Source: Anolis carolinensis
Taxonomy: Eukaryota
Direction: 5' to 3'
Length of the DNA: 64,000 nt
Assembly: GCF_035594765.1 (NCBI RefSeq)
Contig: NW_026943820.1
Coordinates: forward strand, 18,608,647 to 18,672,646
The notes beneath the pieces are model-generated. The model worked only from the letters and a program-made list of their open reading frames with translations. It was not told the origin of the DNA and made no database searches. Below are positions 14,998 to 24,151 of this stretch, one piece after another (position 1 is the stretch's first letter; every line of letters begins with the position of its first letter). The position numbers and the translations under genes are program-made.

Positions 14998-16023
14998 CAG
15001 GGGTCCTCAAACTTTTAAAGCTGAGGGCCTGTCCACAATCCTTCAGACTGTTGAGGGGCCAGATTATCATTTGAAAAAAAAAATACAAACAAATTCCGAT
15101 GCACACTGGATATGTCTTATTTGTAGTGCAAAAAAACAACAAGAACAATGAAAGAACAATACAATATTTAAAAATAAAAACAATTTTAACCAACATAAAT
15201 TTATCAGGATTTCAATGGGAAGTGTGGTCCTGCTTCTGGCCAATGAGATAGTCAAGTTAATTAGGGTTGTTGTTGTGTGCCTTCAAGTCATTTCAGACTT
15301 TGGGCGAGCCTAAGTCTAAAATTTATTTATTTATTATTTACTGCATTTATTTACTACATTTGTATCACACCTTTCTCACCCCAAAGGGGACTCAGAGTGG
15401 CTTACAAGTTATATGTACATACAATATATTATTAGCATAGTACAATGTTAGCATTATGTATTACTATATTGAACTATACCACTATACTGTAATATTATTA
15501 GTAATATTATATGTAATATAGAATATATAATTAATATTATTATATGGTATTATTATTAGTGTTTTATTGTATTACATTATAATATTATCAATATTATATG
15601 TATACACAATATATTATACAGTAGAGTCTCACTTATCCAACATAAACGGGCCGGCAGAACATTGGATAAGCGAATATGTTGGATAATAAGGAGAGATTAA
15701 GGAGAAGCCTATTAAACATCAAATTAGGTGATGATTTTACAAATTAAGACCAAAACATCATGTTATACAACAAATCTGGCCGAAAAAGTAGTTCAATAGG
15801 CAGTAATGCTATGTAGTAATTACTGTATTTACGAATTTAGCACCAAAATATCATGATATATTGAAAACATTGACTACAAAAATGCGTTGGATAATCCAGA
15901 ACGTTGGATAAGCGAGTGTTGGATAAGTGAGACTCTACTGTATTATAAAACTGAGGGCGGGGGCCAGGTAAATGACCTCGGAGGGCCACATCTGGCCCCC
16001 GGGCCTTAGTTTGGGGACCCCTG
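14998..16023. mobile_element. Non-autonomous hAT element (TIR caggggtcctcaaact), TSD ctccaggt, with a nested pogo MITE at 15619-15940
   Basis: Exact 8-bp TSD at 14990-14997 and 16024-16031; sister copies at ~25948-26319 and 44472-44848. Confidence 0.9.
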
Positions 16024-16189
16024 CTCCAGGTAGTGCCACCTTGCCAAGTTGTTTTTTGATCTGCCCACTCCGCTTCTTAGTCTGTTCAGTTCGCTCATGA
16101 TCTTTGGGCCTCCAACTCCCAGAAGCCCTGGCCAGAGACTCCAATAGTCAGGCATTCTGGGAGCTGAAGTCCAAAACACCCGGAGGGCG

Positions 16190-16401
16190 GCGGGCGGAGG
16201 GGGAACGGAACGCCTGCGATTGGCTCGCCTGGGCACGACGTCAGAGGCGCGCGCCGCTCCTCGGTCCCCGCGGTGCCTTGTGGGGCGGGTAGTTCCGTTT
16301 CCTGCGCGGAGGGCGCGTCTCCTGCGTCGTGGTCGCCGTCGCGGCGGCGGAGGGGCCTGCGGGGCCTGTGGGTCCGGGAGCGCGCGCCAGGCGAGGCGAG
16401 G
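16190..16401 (+). promoter_or_regulatory. THAP11 CpG-island promoter and 5' UTR
   Basis: CpG-rich; inverted CCAAT (ATTGG ~16219), CRE-like GACGTCA ~16237, GC box GGGGCGGG ~16282, TTCCG ETS core ~16293. Confidence 0.7.
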
Positions 16402-17097
16402 ATGCCGGGCTTCACGTGCTGCGTGCCGGGCTGCTACAACAACTCCCACCGGGACAAGGCGCTGCACTTCTACACCTTCCCGAAGGACGCGGAGCTGCGC
16501 CGCCTGTGGCTGAAGAACGTGTCCCGGGCGGGCGTCTCGGGCTGCTTCTCCACCTTCCAGCCCACCACGGGCCACCGCGTCTGCTCCGAGCACTTCCCCG
16601 GCGGGAGGAAGAGCTACCTGGTGCGCGTGCCCACCATCTTCCCGCTGCGGGGCGTCAACGAGCGCAAGGGCGCCGGAGGAGGGAGGAGGCCGCGCGGGCA
16701 CGCCCCCGTCCACGCCGCCCAGGCCGCCCAGGCCGCCGCCCAGGCCGCGGTGCTGCTCACCCTCCAGGAGGCCGCAGCAGGAGCGGGAAGTGGCGGCGGC
16801 GCGGCGGAGGCGGCGCAGGCCTTGAGGGCCGGGATGGGCGCCGGCAGCCCCGAGGACGTCAAGCCCATGGACCTGACGGTGCAGCTGGAGCTAGGCGGGC
16901 CGGCCGCCGCCGCTGCTGCCGCCGCCGCCGCGCTGGTGTCTCCCATGAGCCTGGCCAGCTTCCTGGCGCAGAACGGGCCCCTGGGCGCGGCCGAGGGCGG
17001 GCCCCCCGACCACTCCTACTCGCTCTCCTCCGGCACCACCTCCGAGGAACTGCTTAGGAAGCTCAACGAGCAGCGCGACATCATCGCCCTCCTGGAG
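16402..17097 (+). CDS. THAP11: THAP domain-containing protein 11 (Ronin), coding segment 1 (232 codons)
   Basis: [65 protein letters not shown] (C2CH THAP finger); VKPMDLTVQ; HCF-1-binding motif DHSY at 17008-17019; start of the coiled coil. Confidence 0.97.
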
Positions 17098-17380
17098 GTC
17101 AAGATATAGATAAATATATATTTACATTTATTTCTAGACTAGCTTGGTTACTCAGCGTTGCCTGAATTATTTTTTAAATTTTACAGAACGCATAAGGTTG
17201 TGGGTGAACTACAACTCCCATCAAGCCAGGTGAACCCCGAGAAACTCCATCAGTAATTAAAGTTTGTTAGGTCGGGCAAGTTTGCTCTAAATCAGGCATG
17301 GGCAAACTTCGGCCACACAGGTGTTTTGGGCTACAACGCCCACAATTCCTATTTTTTTCCCAAGTATACTTCCTATAAAA

Positions 17381-17670
17381 GCTGCTGAACTTACGGACCA
17401 AAAGGTCCCGGGTTCAAATCCCAGGAGCGGAATGAACGCCCGCTGTTAGCCCCAGCTCCTGCCAACCTAGCAGTTCGAAAACATGCAAATGTGAGTAGAT
17501 CAATAGGTACCGCTCCGGCAGGAAGGTAACGGTGCTCCATGCAGTCATGCCGGCCACATGACCTGGAGATGTCTATGGACAACACCGGCTCTTCAGCTTA
17601 GAAATAGAGATGAGCACCAACCCCCAGAGTCGGTCACGACTGGACTTAACGTCAGGGGAAACCTTTACCT
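17381..17670 (+). mobile_element. Sauria-type SINE
   Basis: gctgctgaactt...ggttcaaatcc B-box...agccccagctcctgccaacctagcagttcgaaaacatgc...aaacctttacct tail; sister copies elsewhere in the window. Confidence 0.85.
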
Positions 17671-17671
17671 T

Positions 17672-18477
17672 ATACGCCAATAATTTCTTATAAATTTCCT
17701 TTCTTAATTTGGTTAAATTGTTTTTAATTCTTTTGTGATATTTATCCTTAAATATTTGTTTCTTTAATTTTTATATTCCCCTCCAATTTTATTTTTTATT
17801 TCTTCTTCTCAATAGTTAAATATCACCAATTCTGATTTGTTCTAATTAATTTGTAGACTTGTTATTAGTCCAAATTCTGTTAAATGAGCCTAAATTTCCT
17901 CCCATTAGTGCAGTGAACTTTAGTAAAATGCTGAGCTGCTGAACTTACTGACAGAAAGGTCGACAGTTCGAATCCGGGGAGCAGAATGAGCTCCTGCTGT
18001 TAGCCCCAGCTTCTGCCAACCTAGCAGTTAGAAAACATGCAATGTGAGCAGGTCAATAGGTACCGTTCCGGCAGGGAAGTAACGGCGCTCCATGCAGTCA
18101 TACCGGCCACATGACCTTAGAGGTGTCTACGGACAGCGCTGGCTCTTTGGCTTAAAAATGGATATGAGCACCAACCCACAGAGTTGGACACGACTAGACC
18201 TAATGTCAGGGGGAAACCTTTACCTTTTACTTTTATTGGATGTTTCATTGATAAAAGGGTATCTATAAACGTATTTATTTTATATTTCTCTTTCATTCAT
18301 ATTCCTTTTATATTACTCTCTTCTCTTATTATGTTAACTAATAATTCTATTACAATTGTGAATAAGATTGGGGAAAGGGGACATCCTTTCCTTGTGCCTC
18401 GTGTTATATTTTTTTTCACTGTTAAACCATCATTCACTATTACTTGGACATAATTTTTTGAATATAATTTATCAATT
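17672..18477 (-). mobile_element. Degraded L1/Tx1-clade LINE reverse-transcriptase fragment inside THAP11, interrupted by a SINE
   Basis: Minus-strand peptide ITRGTRKGCPLSPILFTIVIELLVNIIRE..IKGI (GTRQGCPLSP motif of L1-clade RT), continuing as EFGLITSLQIN*NKSE; contains stop codons. Confidence 0.85.
17928..18230 (+). mobile_element. Sauria-type SINE nested in the LINE fragment
   Basis: Same family as 17381-17670, ending ggggaaacctttacctttt. Confidence 0.85.
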
Positions 18478-18479
18478 AG

Positions 18480-18617
18480 GTGAAGATGAAGGAGATGAAG
18501 GGCAGCATCCGGCGCCTCCGCCTGGCCGAAGCCCAGCTGCGTGAGGAGGTCCGCGAGAAGGACCGCCTCCTCCATGCCGCCACCATGGGCGGCCACCGCA
18601 AGCGCCACGGCCTCTGA
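18480..18617 (+). CDS. THAP11: THAP11 coding segment 2 (VKMKEMKGSIRRLRLAEAQLREEVREKDRLLHAATMGGHRKRHGL*)
   Basis: Direct continuation of the THAP11 coiled coil; GC-rich and uninterrupted; preceded by caattag; spliced protein 277 aa. Confidence 0.93.
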   Translation: MKMKEMKGSIRRLRLAEAQLREEVREKDRLLHAATMGGHRKRHGL

Positions 18618-18689
18618 GCCTCACCAGCCCCTTCTCCCTCCGGAACGCGGGAAGGACAGAGCCGCCCACTCTTTCAGGAAGCCTCTCCC

Positions 18690-19720
18690 ACTATTCCTAG
18701 GAGAACTGCGCACCTCAACACCGGTATCAAAAGGCGATCCTCTGCCAGCCAACTCCATACTCCTTGCATCATTATGTGCGATTACAACTCTGAGACAGAC
18801 TTCGGATGCTGCAGTGTGGGCGATGCTGTTGCCACGGATGAGCGCCACTCTCCTGCTCTGCTCTACGTTTTACCGGCGGGACGCCGCTTTTCCCTCTCAT
18901 TTCAAGAAACCCCAGCTGCTGTGTCCACCAGCGCATGCCGACCCTGGCTCTAAAACTCAAGTATCACCATGAGAGTGGCCCATCACGGCTTCCCTGGAAT
19001 ATTTTTTAGGAAAACAGTCTGGGCTGTTGTTCATTGGCTTGTACTCCTTGTATTATGATGAGTGATTACAACTCTGAGGCAGACCTTTAATGCCGTTCCA
19101 TCTCTAGCAACAGCAGGAAATGCCTCCTGAAATGGAAAGACACTGGTCAATGTTTCCCTTCCCTATGTGTCCGCTAGCACAGACTGGGCCAGACCCAAAA
19201 ACTCACTGTTCACATTTATGCCTATGAGACTTGTGCACTAAGACTTGTTAGAAGGACAGTCTGGGCTATTGTTTGTTGGCTTGTACTCCTTGTATTATTA
19301 TTATTATTATTATTATTATGTCTTATTATAAGTCTGAGGCAGACGCCGGATGCTGTTGCAACAGATCTCCTTTTAGCATCATTAAGGAAATGTCTCTTGA
19401 TCCCTTCAGCTCTACACTATGACAGACAGAATGCCAGTGGAAAGGCACTGGTCAACTTTTCCCTCTTATTTCAGGAAGCCTGGGCTGCTGTTTCCACCAT
19501 GGCACATTGTCCCAGACTCAAAAATTCACTTTTCACGTCCACGCCTATGAGACTTGCCTGCCAAGGCTTCACAAACATATTTCTAGAAGGACACTCTGGT
19601 TGATCGCTGGGCAGCTTGTACCCCTTGTGTTATTATGTGTTATTAAAAGTCTGAGGCCGATGGTGGGGTCTGTTGAAACTGGTCCATCTGTAGCATCCAT
19701 GAGGAAATGTCTTTTGTAAA
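18690..19720 (+). repeat. Degenerate tandem repeat (~4 units of 250-330 bp) in the THAP11 3' UTR
   Basis: Recurring blocks tagaaggacagtctggg / cttgtactccttgtattat / tctgaggcagac / aggaaatgtctc / cactggtcaa / gcctatgagacttg. Confidence 0.8.
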
Positions 19721-20558
19721 GCTGGATAGTTCCATTCCGGTCATGTAGGACTCTGAGCTGCTGCCAAATACTGAGTACAAAGCCAATTTTGAGGAAAGAT
19801 AGGTTACATATTTGATAAGCTCACGCTTGAGTAGTTTAAACTGCAATTCTCATTATACCAGGATTATTTTAGTAGATTTTTTTTTGTTTAACAGCACCAT
19901 GGAAAATATTTTTTTTCTTTATCCTTCCATAATATGAAGGACCAGGAGGAAAATGGGATTGCGGATTTTTCTTCTGTCTCTCCCAATCTCTCAGAAAATT
20001 ACTGATGGAGATTACTCCAAATATGATGTCATTTCTGGTGTGCAGATTCTGAACAGTCAAAGAGGGTAATAGACACATATGGCCTACATCACTATATTGC
20101 AGTTGTTGTTGTTACTGGTTTGCCTTTCTTCTGTAAACGGATAGGAGTTCTTGTGTTTGTGCCATAGTTGGATGGTCCCGAGCCCTTCAACAGTCGTGTC
20201 TTGTGTCACTTTTGCTAATGTTTTATTTAGCTTGATTTAAATCAGTACTGTGCAGTACATTTCCTTTTAACTTAAGTTGCAGTGCAGTCTGGCTAACATT
20301 AATGGAATTAGATTAATTTCTGATCACTGTGTCTGTATGTTAGCGCAGATGATCAGACCACTTTAATGGCACAGGTGTGGACTGACAACTCAGTTTGCAA
20401 GATTTTCAGATTGAAACAAATCCATGCTTGGAATGGATGAAAGTGAAAGAAGAGCCCGTCTTAATCTGATTCACTTTGATCAAAAAAGGATGGCACTCTT
20501 CAATCTGTTACTACATATATGTACAACTAAATAGATTCTTCTGTTTAATACTTTAGAG

Positions 20559-20692
20559 CAGGGTTTCTCAAACTATACCCCTCCAGGTGTTTTGCACTTC
20601 CACTCCCAGAAATCCCAGCCAGCTTCCCAGCTGTTAGAATTGTGGGAGCTGAAGTCCAAAACATCTTGAGGAGCACAGTTTGAGAAACACTG
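20559..20692. mobile_element. hAT-type MITE in the THAP11 3' UTR
   Basis: cagggtttctcaaact...agtttgagaaacactg; TSD ctttagag/ttttagag. Confidence 0.85.
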
Positions 20693-21756
20693 TTTTAGAG
20701 CATTTGATAAGAGTCCATTCACATAAAAGCCTACCACTATTATTACTGCCCAGCTTTTTAAAGAATGCCAGGTTCCATCCACTAAGAGGAAGGGAAAAAT
20801 AGAACAATTTCTCAGATCCTTCTGTTTTAATCAAAAATCAGATTTGTATAAAGGACAATTGGCTCATCTGGTTTGATGGACTTCCTGTATTTTTAGTGTA
20901 TCTTCAGTTGGAACTATTGTGACTTGCTGGAGTTGGCTAGTGTCAGGATGATGTTCTTTCCAGTTCATTCTTATTTTGGTTAAAGTGCTTTTTTATTTCA
21001 TGTAATAATAATCTTTAAAAACCTACAAGCATATATTGCTTACATATATTGTACAATGAAGAAGAAAAAGAAATTACTTTGTGCAAATTAAAATGCTAGG
21101 TAAAGCACTGTATAGAATCCTCCGTGGGTTTTATGTGGCCCTTGTTCTTCTTTACCATGTATAGATGAGAAGACCTGTAAGCCTCTTTCTATAGTTCGGA
21201 GCTCGTGTCATTAGCAATGCAGTTCATTGGGAAATGTAGCAGCAGAATGTAAATCCTAATTGTGTTGGATTTTGTGGATGCCCTGCAGTAGGTATTGGGG
21301 AATTGATCTGTTCTTTGAACAAGATAGTAGACTGTATCCAGTTATTTGAGTAGAATTTGCAAGAGTATTGTCCATTATATACTTTTATTTTTGGAATTAA
21401 TCTCTAACTTTTTTTCTGCTTGCTGTCTTGTGCTTCTTAGATAGGGAAGTGAAATGCAGGCACCCTGGTTACAGAGTGTGCCCTGAGGTTGTCTTTGGTC
21501 ACACAGTTTTCAGTTTGGTCTGTGTGCGTCTGTTGAAACCTTAGAGAGCACGCCAGCTTTCTGACATTGTAAATAAGACTGCATTCTACTTGGATGAAAA
21601 TGTTTCAAAGATGTGTGTCGTGACACTTGTGGTACTTTTCTACCATCATTATGCACTAAAATATGTTCAGTTGATTTAATTGCAGGACTGGTTATTTCCT
21701 GGACTGTTCTATTCTTGCTGGTTATCCTGAGGTGCTAACAAACAATGCTTAATTTG

Positions 21757-21762
21757 AATAAA
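21757..21762 (+). terminator. Candidate THAP11 polyadenylation signal
   Basis: AATAAA followed by GT/T-rich sequence at the end of a mostly repeat-free UTR-like stretch. Confidence 0.55.
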
Positions 21763-22786
21763 GTCTATTTTGTTTTGTTATGCTACAGTATGTCGTTCAT
21801 CTATGATGAATAACACATCTTCGTATACCTTTTCGTCCTCTATGACAATCTACTTGACTCTTGAAGAAAATACATTTCATGCATTTTACCTAGATTTGAA
21901 TGCCTTATTTACTTGAATCTAATGCTCACCTTTTTTGGCTAAGTGACCTCGCCATCTGAAGGGTTCCATGACATTTTTGGTCATGGAACCCTTCAGAATA
22001 CGTTTATATTCTGCCTAACCCTAACACTATCCCTGATTGGTTTAATCATAATATATTCCAAATCTTTTTACACTACTTCCAATACATTTCCCAATTTCCT
22101 ATAGAACATCAGATTTCTGAGTAAATTTACTCTGATGTTTTATGGATTATTTATTTATTTACAGTATTTATATTCCGCCCTTCTCACCCCAAGTGTCATT
22201 TATCTTAAAAACCTTTCAAGAAAGAAAAAAAATCAAAAAGAAATGTGGAATCAACATGAAAAATCTGACTATGCAGGAGTTGTTCTCGATGTAAAATGTT
22301 GAAATATGTAGCCAGTATATGTATATGTGATAAAAATAGCCGTGCTATGAAATAGCTATTATGGAGACTGTTAATCCAATTGTTGGCCTCATGTAGTTTT
22401 ATTTTAAAATCCATTTTAAGTTTGGAACCCCCCCCCCCCCTTTCTCACCCAGAGGGTACTCAAGGCGGCTTTACATACAAGTAATGATTGAATGCCTTAA
22501 AACACAATGTACACTTAAATAAATATTGAAATAGAAATTATAAGTACATTAAAACAATTAAAAATATAAAAACAAAACCATTGGACCAAATCACACCAAA
22601 TTTGGCCACTAAATACATAGTCATCCAATCAATGCCGCATGCAGATTGATTGGATGATTATGTATTTTGTGGCCAAATTTGGTGTGATTTGGTCCAATGG
22701 TTTTGTTGTTTATTCCATGGGAATTATGCACATTACATTATATATATATATATATATACACACACATACACATATATATATATATA

Positions 22787-23089
22787 CAGTAGAGTCTCAC
22801 TTATCCAAGCCTCTGGATTATCCAAGCCATTTTTGTAGTCAATGTTTTCAATATATCATGATATTTTGGTTCTAAATTCGTAAATACAGTAATTATAACA
22901 TAACATAACTGCCTATTGAACTACTTTTTCTGTCAAATTTGTTGTATAACATGATGTTTAGGTGCTTAATTTGTAAAATCATAACCTAATTTGATGTTTA
23001 ATAGGCTTTTCCTTAATCCCTCCTTATTATCCAAGTTATTCGCTTATCCAAGCTTCTGCCGGCCTGTTTAGCTTGGATAAGTGAGACTG
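22787..23089. mobile_element. Tc1/pogo MITE
   Basis: Same TIR family, inserted in a TA microsatellite. Confidence 0.85.
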
Positions 23090-23699
23090 TATATAATTAT
23101 GTCATTCTATTATTATTCTATTATTATTGTAGTATATTATCATATTATTACTAGTATATTGTTATTATATTATTTATTATTCATGACTATATTGAAACTA
23201 GAATTGAGAGAAATCAGTGTGGAAAGTGCACGAGGTACCATAGATTGTTGTACATGGAAATAAGGGTAATAAATAGTTTTTGATTTATTAAATACAGTTA
23301 TATATTGCAATTATACATTTTTGTTATTTAAACTATACATATTGCGAAATTATGTTTTTTTTTCCTCAAAGTGACACACCACCCAAATTATGCTAGGGGT
23401 TTTTTTTGGTGAATTTTGACACACCAAGCGCAAAAGGTTGCCCATCGTCTCATAGACTTAGCATGGGAATTTGGTTAACCAGTTAAAATTCATGAGTAAA
23501 CCAGGTTTTTTTTTTTAAATTGAAAAATTTCGGGGGGGGGGTTGAACTCCTAACACACACACACCCGCTACAGGCCTGCCCTTCCTTTTCCCCCTCAGCC
23601 GCTCATGGGCCTGAGGCTGTTAGGAATGGTGGGAGTTGAAGTCCAAAACACCTGAGGGGAAAGCCCACGCCTGCTCTGAAGGGAAGGGTCCCAGAGTGC

Positions 23700-23905
23700 C
23701 TTGCGGCCGATTCACCTACCAAAAGCTTGCTGGGAGCTGTAGTCGCCCCTCCCGTTTCCTCGGAAGCCGGCGTATGCGCATGTACGGCGGCCGAGGGGGC
23801 GTGGCCGGAAGAGGCGGGCCGGGCGGGGAGCGCTCGGAAGGTTTGTGCCGCGCTCGGTGCCTTCGCCGCCGCGCCTGCCGCCATTAGCCGAGTTGGAGCT
23901 GCGAG
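23700..23905 (+). promoter_or_regulatory. NUTF2 CpG-island promoter and non-coding exon 1 (donor GAG|gtgaga at 23905)
   Basis: SBS/Ronin motif TGGGAGCTGTAGT 23731-23743, NRF1-like TGCGCATG ~23775, ETS CCGGAAG ~23805, GC boxes, YY1 CCGCCATT 23878-23885. Confidence 0.8.
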
Positions 23906-24151
23906 GTGAGAGAGCGCGGAGGAGCGGGGCGGGGGGAGAAGTGCGCGTGCGCGAGGGGCCCGAGCTCTCCCGGGGGGTCGCCTCGCCTCGTTCCCGCCTC
24001 GCGTCCCTCGGAGGGGAAGGGCGTGTCGCGGGCGGCGGGGCCTACAAGGCCCCCTCAGGAAATCGGGCGGGAGGCCTTTGCCGAGGGCTTCTCTCTAGGC
24101 GTCCCCGGAGGTTTCCTCTCCCTTTGTGCGCTTGGCAAAGCACATGTGCAG

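What the first reader, a model, noticed from the sequence alone, without database searches (positions are those of the whole stretch)
17096..18487. Apparent de novo intron in THAP11 created by a LINE insertion whose target-site duplication contains AG|GT
Seen: the THAP11 ORF breaks at ...LLEVK and resumes 1.38 kb later as VKMKEMKG..., with the remainder intact. The insert is flanked by a 10-bp direct repeat with one mismatch (AGGTCAAGAT 17096-17105; AGGTGAAGAT 18478-18487); GTC and GTG both encode Val. Splicing from GT at 17098 to AG at 18478-18479 removes 1382 nt and rebuilds GAG|GTG AAG ATG with no residue gained or lost (277 aa). The antisense L1-like RT fragment supplies a U-rich, AG-free ~100-nt stretch before the acceptor, with a branch-like ttcac at ~18433. 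The insert has collected stop codons and nested SINEs while the downstream coding segment stayed intact, which argues for an old, fixed, spliced insertion. Known: mammalian THAP11 is single-exon and essential in mouse; intron gain is very rare in amniotes; duplication of an AGGT proto-splice site by a TE is the classic proposed route. Inference: a rarely observed, clean vertebrate example. The donor GAG|GTCAAG is weak, and retention gives a stop two codons later (ATA TAG), removing most of the dimerisation coiled coil, so retention could regulate THAP11 dose.
Basis: partly seen in the sequence, partly recalled or inferred. Interest (0 to 1): 0.92.

Follow-up and report, generated by a model that had tools for sequence, protein, structure and literature searches.

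The report
Retrotransposon-born intron in lizard THAP11
In one anole lizard, a LINE-1-type jumping gene landed inside the essential, normally intron-free gene THAP11 and is now cut out of the message exactly, a rare vertebrate case where the birth of a new intron can be read from the DNA.

Summary
Confirmed. THAP11 of an Anolis lizard (probably A. carolinensis; inferred) is split by 1382 nt (GT 17098 to AG 18479) between 10-bp direct repeats holding AGGT. A contig from one RNA-like run (X20, depth 54) skips exactly this stretch; a DNA-sized run of another study is continuous across the intron-exon 2 border. The site is uninterrupted in A. sagrei, Sceloporus, other squamates, birds and gar. The closest outgroups read GTC like the left repeat, while the joined contig reads GTG like the right repeat: a spliced product, not an empty allele. 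Exon 2 has 7 synonymous and 0 replacement differences from A. sagrei. The insert is an antisense L1-like RT piece starting at the right repeat, later split by two Sauria SINEs. Corrections: no L1 3' end, poly-A or canonical nick site is recognisable, so the 'TSD' is likely rather than shown; regulation by retention has no support. The mechanism is textbook; I found no published amniote case. First-stage readers noted similar, unchecked candidates elsewhere in this genome (CCDC96, TLR21, IRG).

The parts
16402..17097 (+). THAP11 coding exon 1 (232 codons: THAP domain, Ala/Gly-rich linker, DHSY HCF-1-binding motif, start of the coiled coil); 74% GC
17096..17105 (+). Left copy of the 10-bp direct repeat, identical to the ancestral site in A. 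sagrei and Sceloporus; holds the donor AG|GT
17098..18479 (+). New GT-AG intron, 1382 nt, phase 0, 39% GC; skipped in the X20 contig
17106..17194 (.). AT-rich stretch of unassigned origin; no ORF2 similarity above shuffled controls, no poly-T run
17195..17260 (.). Short multi-copy repeat piece (MITE-like), with ACTACAACTCCCA at 17208-17220
   Evidence: (very high depth in X1)
17288..17352 (.). Short multi-copy repeat piece (MITE-like), many copies in the window and in A. sagrei
17380..17675 (+). Sauria-type SINE copy 1 (5'-truncated; ends in ACCTTT repeats); 92% to another copy in the window, 85% to copy 2
17676..17901 (-). L1-like ORF2 RT piece B (RT motifs 6-7 region), with stops and a frameshift
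   Evidence: E about 7e-11 to A. carolinensis RT proteins P0292, P0293
17900..18230 (+). Sauria-type SINE copy 2, inserted inside the RT just after the FADD-equivalent motif (left edge approximate)
18231..18479 (-). L1-like ORF2 RT piece A; similarity begins at the right repeat (5' truncation point); supplies the AG-free U-rich 3' end of the intron on the + strand
   Evidence: 64% to P0293, E 1e-30
18378..18477 (+). 100-nt AG-free, 46% T stretch with branch-like TTCAC at 18415 and 18433 (branch use not shown)
18478..18487 (+). Right copy of the direct repeat (derived synonymous GTC to GTG); holds the acceptor AG|GT
18480..18617 (+). THAP11 coding exon 2 (45 codons and stop; C-terminal part of the coiled coil); transcript contig runs on past 19200

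Best explanation
After this anole lineage split from A. sagrei, a 5'-truncated L1-like element inserted antisense into the single THAP11 coding exon at GAG|GTC AAG ATG and duplicated 8-10 bp of the target. The left copy became the 5' splice site (the unchanged ancestral exon letters), the right copy, joined to the L1 letter T, became the 3' splice site TAG|G, and the antisense of the A-rich ORF2 gave a U-rich, AG-free run with branch-like sites in front of it. The major spliceosome removes 1382 nt and rebuilds the ancestral 277-codon frame, so THAP11 stayed functional. The intron then decayed neutrally (stops, frameshift, two Sauria SINEs, MITE-like pieces, probable deletion of the L1 3' part). 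Shown: structure, absence in outgroups, joined contig, L1 origin of the 3' half, selection on exon 2. Inferred: target-primed insertion as cause of the repeat, loss of the L1 3' end by later deletion, branch point, splicing efficiency, fixation.
For: Joined contig, depth 53.8, 1080 nt laid with 0 mismatches, no cover on unique intron bins (X20 record 25). The joint falls at 17095/18478, so the contig carries the right-copy GTG, whereas A. sagrei and Sceloporus have GTC. DNA-sized run X1 is continuous over 18210-19200 and X18 over 17071-17295. Uninterrupted site in 12 fetched loci, from A. sagrei to gar. Flanks collinear with A. sagrei and Sceloporus, where the gene sits beside CENPT. Exon 2: 7 synonymous, 0 replacement differences from A. 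sagrei in 33 codons; 4 polarise to this lineage. RT similarity starts at the right repeat. Large deletions are reported to erode fixed LINEs in Anolis (PMC3787681). Coiled-coil loss in THAP11 was not viable in HEK-293 cells (bioRxiv 10.1101/813352).
Against: The joined form was seen in one run only, whose RNA status is a guess by the tool; the two other RNA-like runs did not cover the junction. No L1 3' end or poly-A tail, and a non-canonical nick site (PMC5381506 says vertebrate L1s end in AATAAA plus poly-A). The donor is weak (7 of 11 matches to the U1 complement, +3C, +5A) and six internal AGs have better pyrimidine runs. Only one other Anolis species could be compared.
Confidence: 0.8

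Rival explanations
1. Same spliced new intron, but born by double-strand-break repair: an internal L1 RNA or DNA fragment (plus filler) was captured at a staggered break, and gap filling made the direct repeat. The L1 endonuclease played no part.
For: Only an internal RT piece is recognisable; no poly-A or L1 3' end; the left junction is not T-rich; 1-2 nt microhomology (AG) at the right junction. Break repair with short direct repeats is a listed route of intron gain (PMC3443670).
Against: An 8-10 bp repeat with a 5'-truncated L1 abutting it in the expected place is ordinary for retrotransposition; 5' microhomology is common in L1 insertions (own knowledge); LINEs in Anolis lose large pieces after fixation. 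A fold-back at the left junction is not above shuffles (z -1.75).
Confidence: 0.12
2. The insertion is polymorphic or there is a second, intron-free copy; the X20 contig comes from an empty allele or a processed copy, and the interrupted copy is a null allele or pseudogene.
For: RNA status of X20 is not on record; a genome-wide search for a second copy was not possible; GTG occurs at this codon in more distant squamates, so the codon is labile.
Against: X20 carries the derived right-copy GTG, not the GTC of the two closest outgroups; it matches this locus over 1080 nt including 3' UTR with 0 mismatches; its 51 Mb of contigs is transcriptome-sized; the X1 contig crosses the acceptor without a break; the insert is old (two SINEs, stops), which fits poorly with a null allele of an essential gene; exon 2 shows no replacement change.
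Confidence: 0.04
3. The intron arose first by another route (small duplication of the AGGT segment or a different element now unrecognisable in 17106-17380) and the L1 piece entered it later.
For: The 5' 280 nt of the intron are not assignable to L1.
Against: L1 similarity begins at the very base of the right repeat; a later insertion would have had to land exactly on the acceptor and replace its pyrimidine tract and branch point. The intron interior does not resemble the flanking exons.
Confidence: 0.04

Closest known systems
Intron gain by transposon insertion at an AGGT proto-splice site (model in Yenerall and Zhou 2012, PMC3443670; cases listed in Oryza, Drosophila, Oikopleura, Zea)
   Same: Duplicated AGGT gives donor and acceptor; coding sequence unchanged; the element becomes the intron.
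   Different: Here in an amniote, from an L1-like non-LTR element, in an essential single-exon gene; that review's table lists no vertebrate for this route.
Introners, including non-LTR retrotransposon introners (Gozashti et al. 2025, PMC12130899)
   Same: A transposable element spliced out of a coding exon by co-opting target-site splice signals.
   Different: Introners are families that made many similar introns in a genome; this is one old, decayed copy and repeated gains by the same family were not tested. The paper does not mention Anolis or amniotes and cites an apparent lack of recent gains in vertebrates.
Transposon-derived new introns in notothenioid slc26a2 (PMC12357937)
   Same: Lineage-specific vertebrate intron gain with recognisable transposon content.
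   Different: Teleost, putative elements described with direct and inverted repeats; here an amniote and an RT-coding L1-like element.
ATP2A1 intron by tandem duplication of an AGGT segment (Hellsten et al. 2011, PMC3265369)
   Same: Both splice sites come from a duplicated AG|GT; precise gain.
   Different: There the intron body is duplicated exon and over 420 million years old; here only 8-10 bp are duplicated, the body is foreign, and the gain is within a genus.

Membership tests
U2-type spliceosomal intron | GT...AG ends | tested here: met
U2-type spliceosomal intron | Removed from the transcript | tested here: met
   X20 record 25; one run, RNA status guessed from size and cover pattern
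U2-type spliceosomal intron | Branch point and pyrimidine tract before the AG | tested here: inconclusive
   TTCAC at 18415 and 18433, 100 nt AG-free, 46% T; only 8 of 14 pyrimidines next to the AG; lariat not testable
Intron gain by transposon insertion at AGGT | Intron absent at the orthologous site in nested outgroups | tested here: met
Intron gain by transposon insertion at AGGT | AGGT-containing target duplicated on both sides, splice sites inside the copies | tested here: met
Intron gain by transposon insertion at AGGT | Intron body derived from a transposable element up to its borders | tested here: inconclusive
   Met at the 3' border (RT begins at 18479); the 5' 280 nt are unassigned or later repeats
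Intron gain by transposon insertion at AGGT | Protein unchanged by the gain | tested here: met
L1 insertion by target-primed reverse transcription | L1-type ORF2 RT sequence | tested here: met
   clade called from similarity to A. carolinensis RT proteins, no tree built
L1 insertion by target-primed reverse transcription | Short target-site duplication and 5' truncation | tested here: met
L1 insertion by target-primed reverse transcription | L1 3' end with poly-A tail at the primed junction | tested here: not met
   No T run after the left repeat; no ORF2 C-terminal similarity; a minus-strand AATAAA near 17128-17133 is not diagnostic in AT-rich DNA
L1 insertion by target-primed reverse transcription | TTTT/AA-type nick site | tested here: not met
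   The primed end would be ...AAGAT/GAAG; target preference of this lizard family is unknown to me
Introner family | Several similar introns from one element family at unrelated loci | not testable with these tools
   No genome-wide access; other candidates exist only as unchecked notes
Intron gain by tandem exon duplication | Intron body resembles the flanking exon | tested here: not met
   Only the 10-bp repeat is shared

The most novel reading that the evidence does not exclude
This is one of several L1-made introns in the anole lineage: antisense, A-rich L1 supplies a ready U-rich AG-poor 3' end, so any insertion whose duplicated target holds AGGT can be spliced at once. Lizard L1 would then act as a low-rate intron generator, and the near absence of intron gain found in mammals would not hold for all amniotes.
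Probability: 0.35. Interest if true: 0.9.

Novelty: new member of a known kind. Interest (0 to 1): 0.74.

Why it matters
Precise intron gain is called very rare in vertebrates, with none documented among human, mouse, rat and dog (PMC3265369), and the AGGT transposon route had no vertebrate entry in the 2012 review. This locus offers the whole set in one genus: the empty site in a congener, both target copies, a recognisable donor element at the acceptor, a joined transcript contig, and an essential gene that enforces correct splicing. It makes a long-standing model directly testable in an amniote (which parts of the L1 make a weak, unmodified exon sequence work as a splice site?), gives a clean phylogenetic marker within Anolis, and points to a genome-wide screen in lizards.

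Tried and rejected
Hairpin over the donor (17098-17139): z -1.75, 14 of 200 shuffles as good, chosen after the fact; in wider context z -0.36; rejected. ORF2 continuing into 17098-17385: not above shuffles. Faster synonymous change near the new intron as compensation (9 lineage changes in 65 codons against 4 in 89): p 0.08, inconclusive; no CpG loss. TSDs around the two SINEs: none convincing. Rfam 15000-24000: nothing. THAP11 of other anoles: none besides A. sagrei in two searches; the retention product is not in the protein collection; DNA for the best L1 protein is not on record. The Phrynocephalus model with introns is an annotation over frameshifts; the site itself is contiguous. Paper searches found no report of this intron (open-access library only). 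The spliced model was searched exon by exon by reference; the joined protein was not sent to any search tool, and was only counted locally for frame and length.

Full report
What is there. The window holds THAP11: ATG at 16402, THAP domain, best relative Anolis sagrei THAP11 at 80%. The frame runs 232 codons to ...LLE at 17097 and resumes at 18480 with VKMKEMKG..., 45 codons to the stop at 18615-18617. The 1382 nt between begin GT and end AG and are bounded by AGGTCAAGAT (17096-17105) and AGGTGAAGAT (18478-18487); read-through stops after ...EVKI. Position 17098 is the only nearby GT giving an open frame to the natural stop, and 18479 the only acceptor that loses no codon. The match of intron bases +3 to +8 to the ancestral exon has a chance of about 3e-4. 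The species is not given; Sauria-type SINEs (ending in ACCTTT repeats, PMC13295347), best RT matches in A. carolinensis and many public runs from 2012 to 2025 suggest A. carolinensis. This is inference. I could not see whether a public gene model already has the two exons; no such protein came up.

It is a gain. The site is uninterrupted in A. sagrei, Sceloporus, Pogona, Phrynocephalus, Podarcis, Crotalus, Paroedura, two galliform-type bird loci and gar; gene ranges equal three times the protein length plus the stop, except for the frameshifted Phrynocephalus model. Flanks on both sides are collinear with A. sagrei and Sceloporus, where the gene lies beside CENPT, so this is the orthologue. 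A. sagrei and Sceloporus read GAG GTC AAG ATG: the left repeat copy is the unchanged ancestral site, and the right copy carries a derived synonymous G.

It is spliced. In run X20 (51 Mb of contigs, RNA by guess) one 1199-nt contig at depth 53.8 lies on 16739-17095 and continues directly on 18478-19200 with no mismatch; unique intron bins have no cover (tables 2 and 8). With the four shared letters AGGT this equals removal of 17098-18479. Because the joint falls there with no mismatch, the contig has GTG, the right-copy letter that splicing keeps; an ancestral empty allele would have GTC. In DNA-sized run X1, a different haplotype from another study, a 1109-nt contig runs unbroken from inside the intron across the acceptor, and another lies at 17694-17952. 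X18 has a depth-3 contig across the donor border, which could be DNA or unspliced RNA and says nothing on regulated retention. Limits: one run shows the joint; contigs give neither strand nor level; the tool drops human-like records silently.

The gene is alive. Against A. sagrei, exon 2 has 7 synonymous and 0 replacement differences in its first 33 codons, and the last 32 codons of exon 1 have 10 and 0; 4 of the exon 2 changes polarise to this lineage. In HEK-293 cells no THAP11 null or coiled-coil-deleted clone could be obtained (bioRxiv 10.1101/813352), and mouse loss is embryonic lethal (PMC13631171). Retention would remove the larger part of the coiled coil, so splicing must be adequate (inference).

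What the insert is. On the minus strand, RT similarity starts at 18479 and runs to 18231 (64% to A. carolinensis protein P0293, E 1e-30), is interrupted by SINE copy 2, and resumes at 17901 to about 17676 (E 7e-11), with stops and a frameshift. SINE copy 1 follows (17380-17675); the two SINEs are 85% alike and 92% and 85% like another copy in the window. Left of it lie two short multi-copy pieces and about 90 nt of unassigned AT-rich DNA; none of it scores above shuffles against ORF2. So about 470 nt of RT survive, and well over 1 kb of ORF2, the 3' UTR and the poly-A tail that end vertebrate L1s (PMC5381506) are not recognisable. The acceptor TAG is the antisense of the first aligned L1 codon (Leu, CTA), so its AG is shared by target and element: the duplication is 8 bp plus 2 nt of microhomology, or 10 bp. 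The primed end is not TTTT/AA. Later deletion is plausible, since large deletions are reported to erode fixed LINEs in Anolis (PMC3787681), but capture at a break cannot be excluded.

How it works. Shown: donor and acceptor sit in the two target copies and the joined product restores the frame. Inferred: the donor is weak (7 of 11 to the U1 complement, +3C, +5A) but is the only usable GT at the edge of a 74% GC exon against a 39% GC intron; lizard L1 ORFs are about 42% A, so the antisense strand is U-rich and gives 100 AG-free nt with two branch-like TTCAC, making 18478-18479 the first AG downstream. Six internal AGs have better pyrimidine runs, yet X20 shows only the correct joint; definition of the GC-rich exon 2 may explain this.

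Comparison with what is known. The route is the transposon-at-AGGT model (PMC3443670), whose listed cases are plants, flies and Oikopleura. Non-LTR introners exist but are a small share of families, and that survey notes an apparent lack of recent gain in vertebrates (PMC12130899). Vertebrate precedents I found are teleost (PMC12357937) or ancient and by exon duplication (PMC3265369). From memory, a few mammalian gains are reported (for example in Sry of a marsupial and in retrogenes or domesticated genes); I did not check these. It works like an introner insertion; membership of an introner family is untested. Canonical L1 insertion is met for RT, repeat and 5' truncation, and not met for tail and nick site.

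Verdict. A real, spliced, genus-level intron gain from an L1-like element in an essential amniote gene. Known kind of mechanism, unusually complete example in a group where it is thought very rare. Overall about 0.92 that it is a genuine new spliced intron, 0.8 that it arose as described. Unchecked first-stage notes on CCDC96, TLR21, an IRG gene and one more gene in this genome are leads for a wider pattern, not support. The joined protein was not searched; exons were searched apart.

Noticed in passing
window 17208-17220: The new intron contains an exact ACTACAACTCCCA, the ZNF143/THAP11-type motif (motif identity from my own knowledge), inside a MITE-like piece; 2 matches in the window against 0.03 expected. 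Earlier notes say many repeats in this genome carry it, so a self-regulation reading is speculative.
   Followed up: partly
window 18750-19700; L001 11300-12440: The THAP11 3' region holds three to four diverged copies of a unit of about 240-285 nt (71-84% alike), also present in A. sagrei and not matched in Sceloporus; no Rfam match. The X20 transcript contig covers the first part.
   Followed up: partly
window 18656, 18663, 18734, 18737: Differences between runs in the 3' UTR (three substitution sites with C>A and C>T at 18663, and a 4-nt insertion), showing X1, X19 and X20 are different haplotypes.
   Followed up: no
window 17256-17261: ATTAAA inside the intron, 160 nt after the donor: a possible premature polyadenylation site that would give the truncated protein.
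   Followed up: no
window 17002-17097 and 18480-18578: Lineage-specific synonymous changes are about three times denser next to the intron than in the THAP domain, including otherwise invariant codons (p 0.08); possible tuning of splicing signals.
   Followed up: partly
L010 2001-3022: The public Phrynocephalus forsythii THAP11 model uses apparent false introns over frameshifts in a GC-rich stretch; likely assembly error.
   Followed up: partly
window 16268-16304; L002 4804-4840: A 37-nt block upstream of the THAP11 start is identical in Sceloporus, a candidate element of the CENPT-THAP11 divergent promoter.
   Followed up: no
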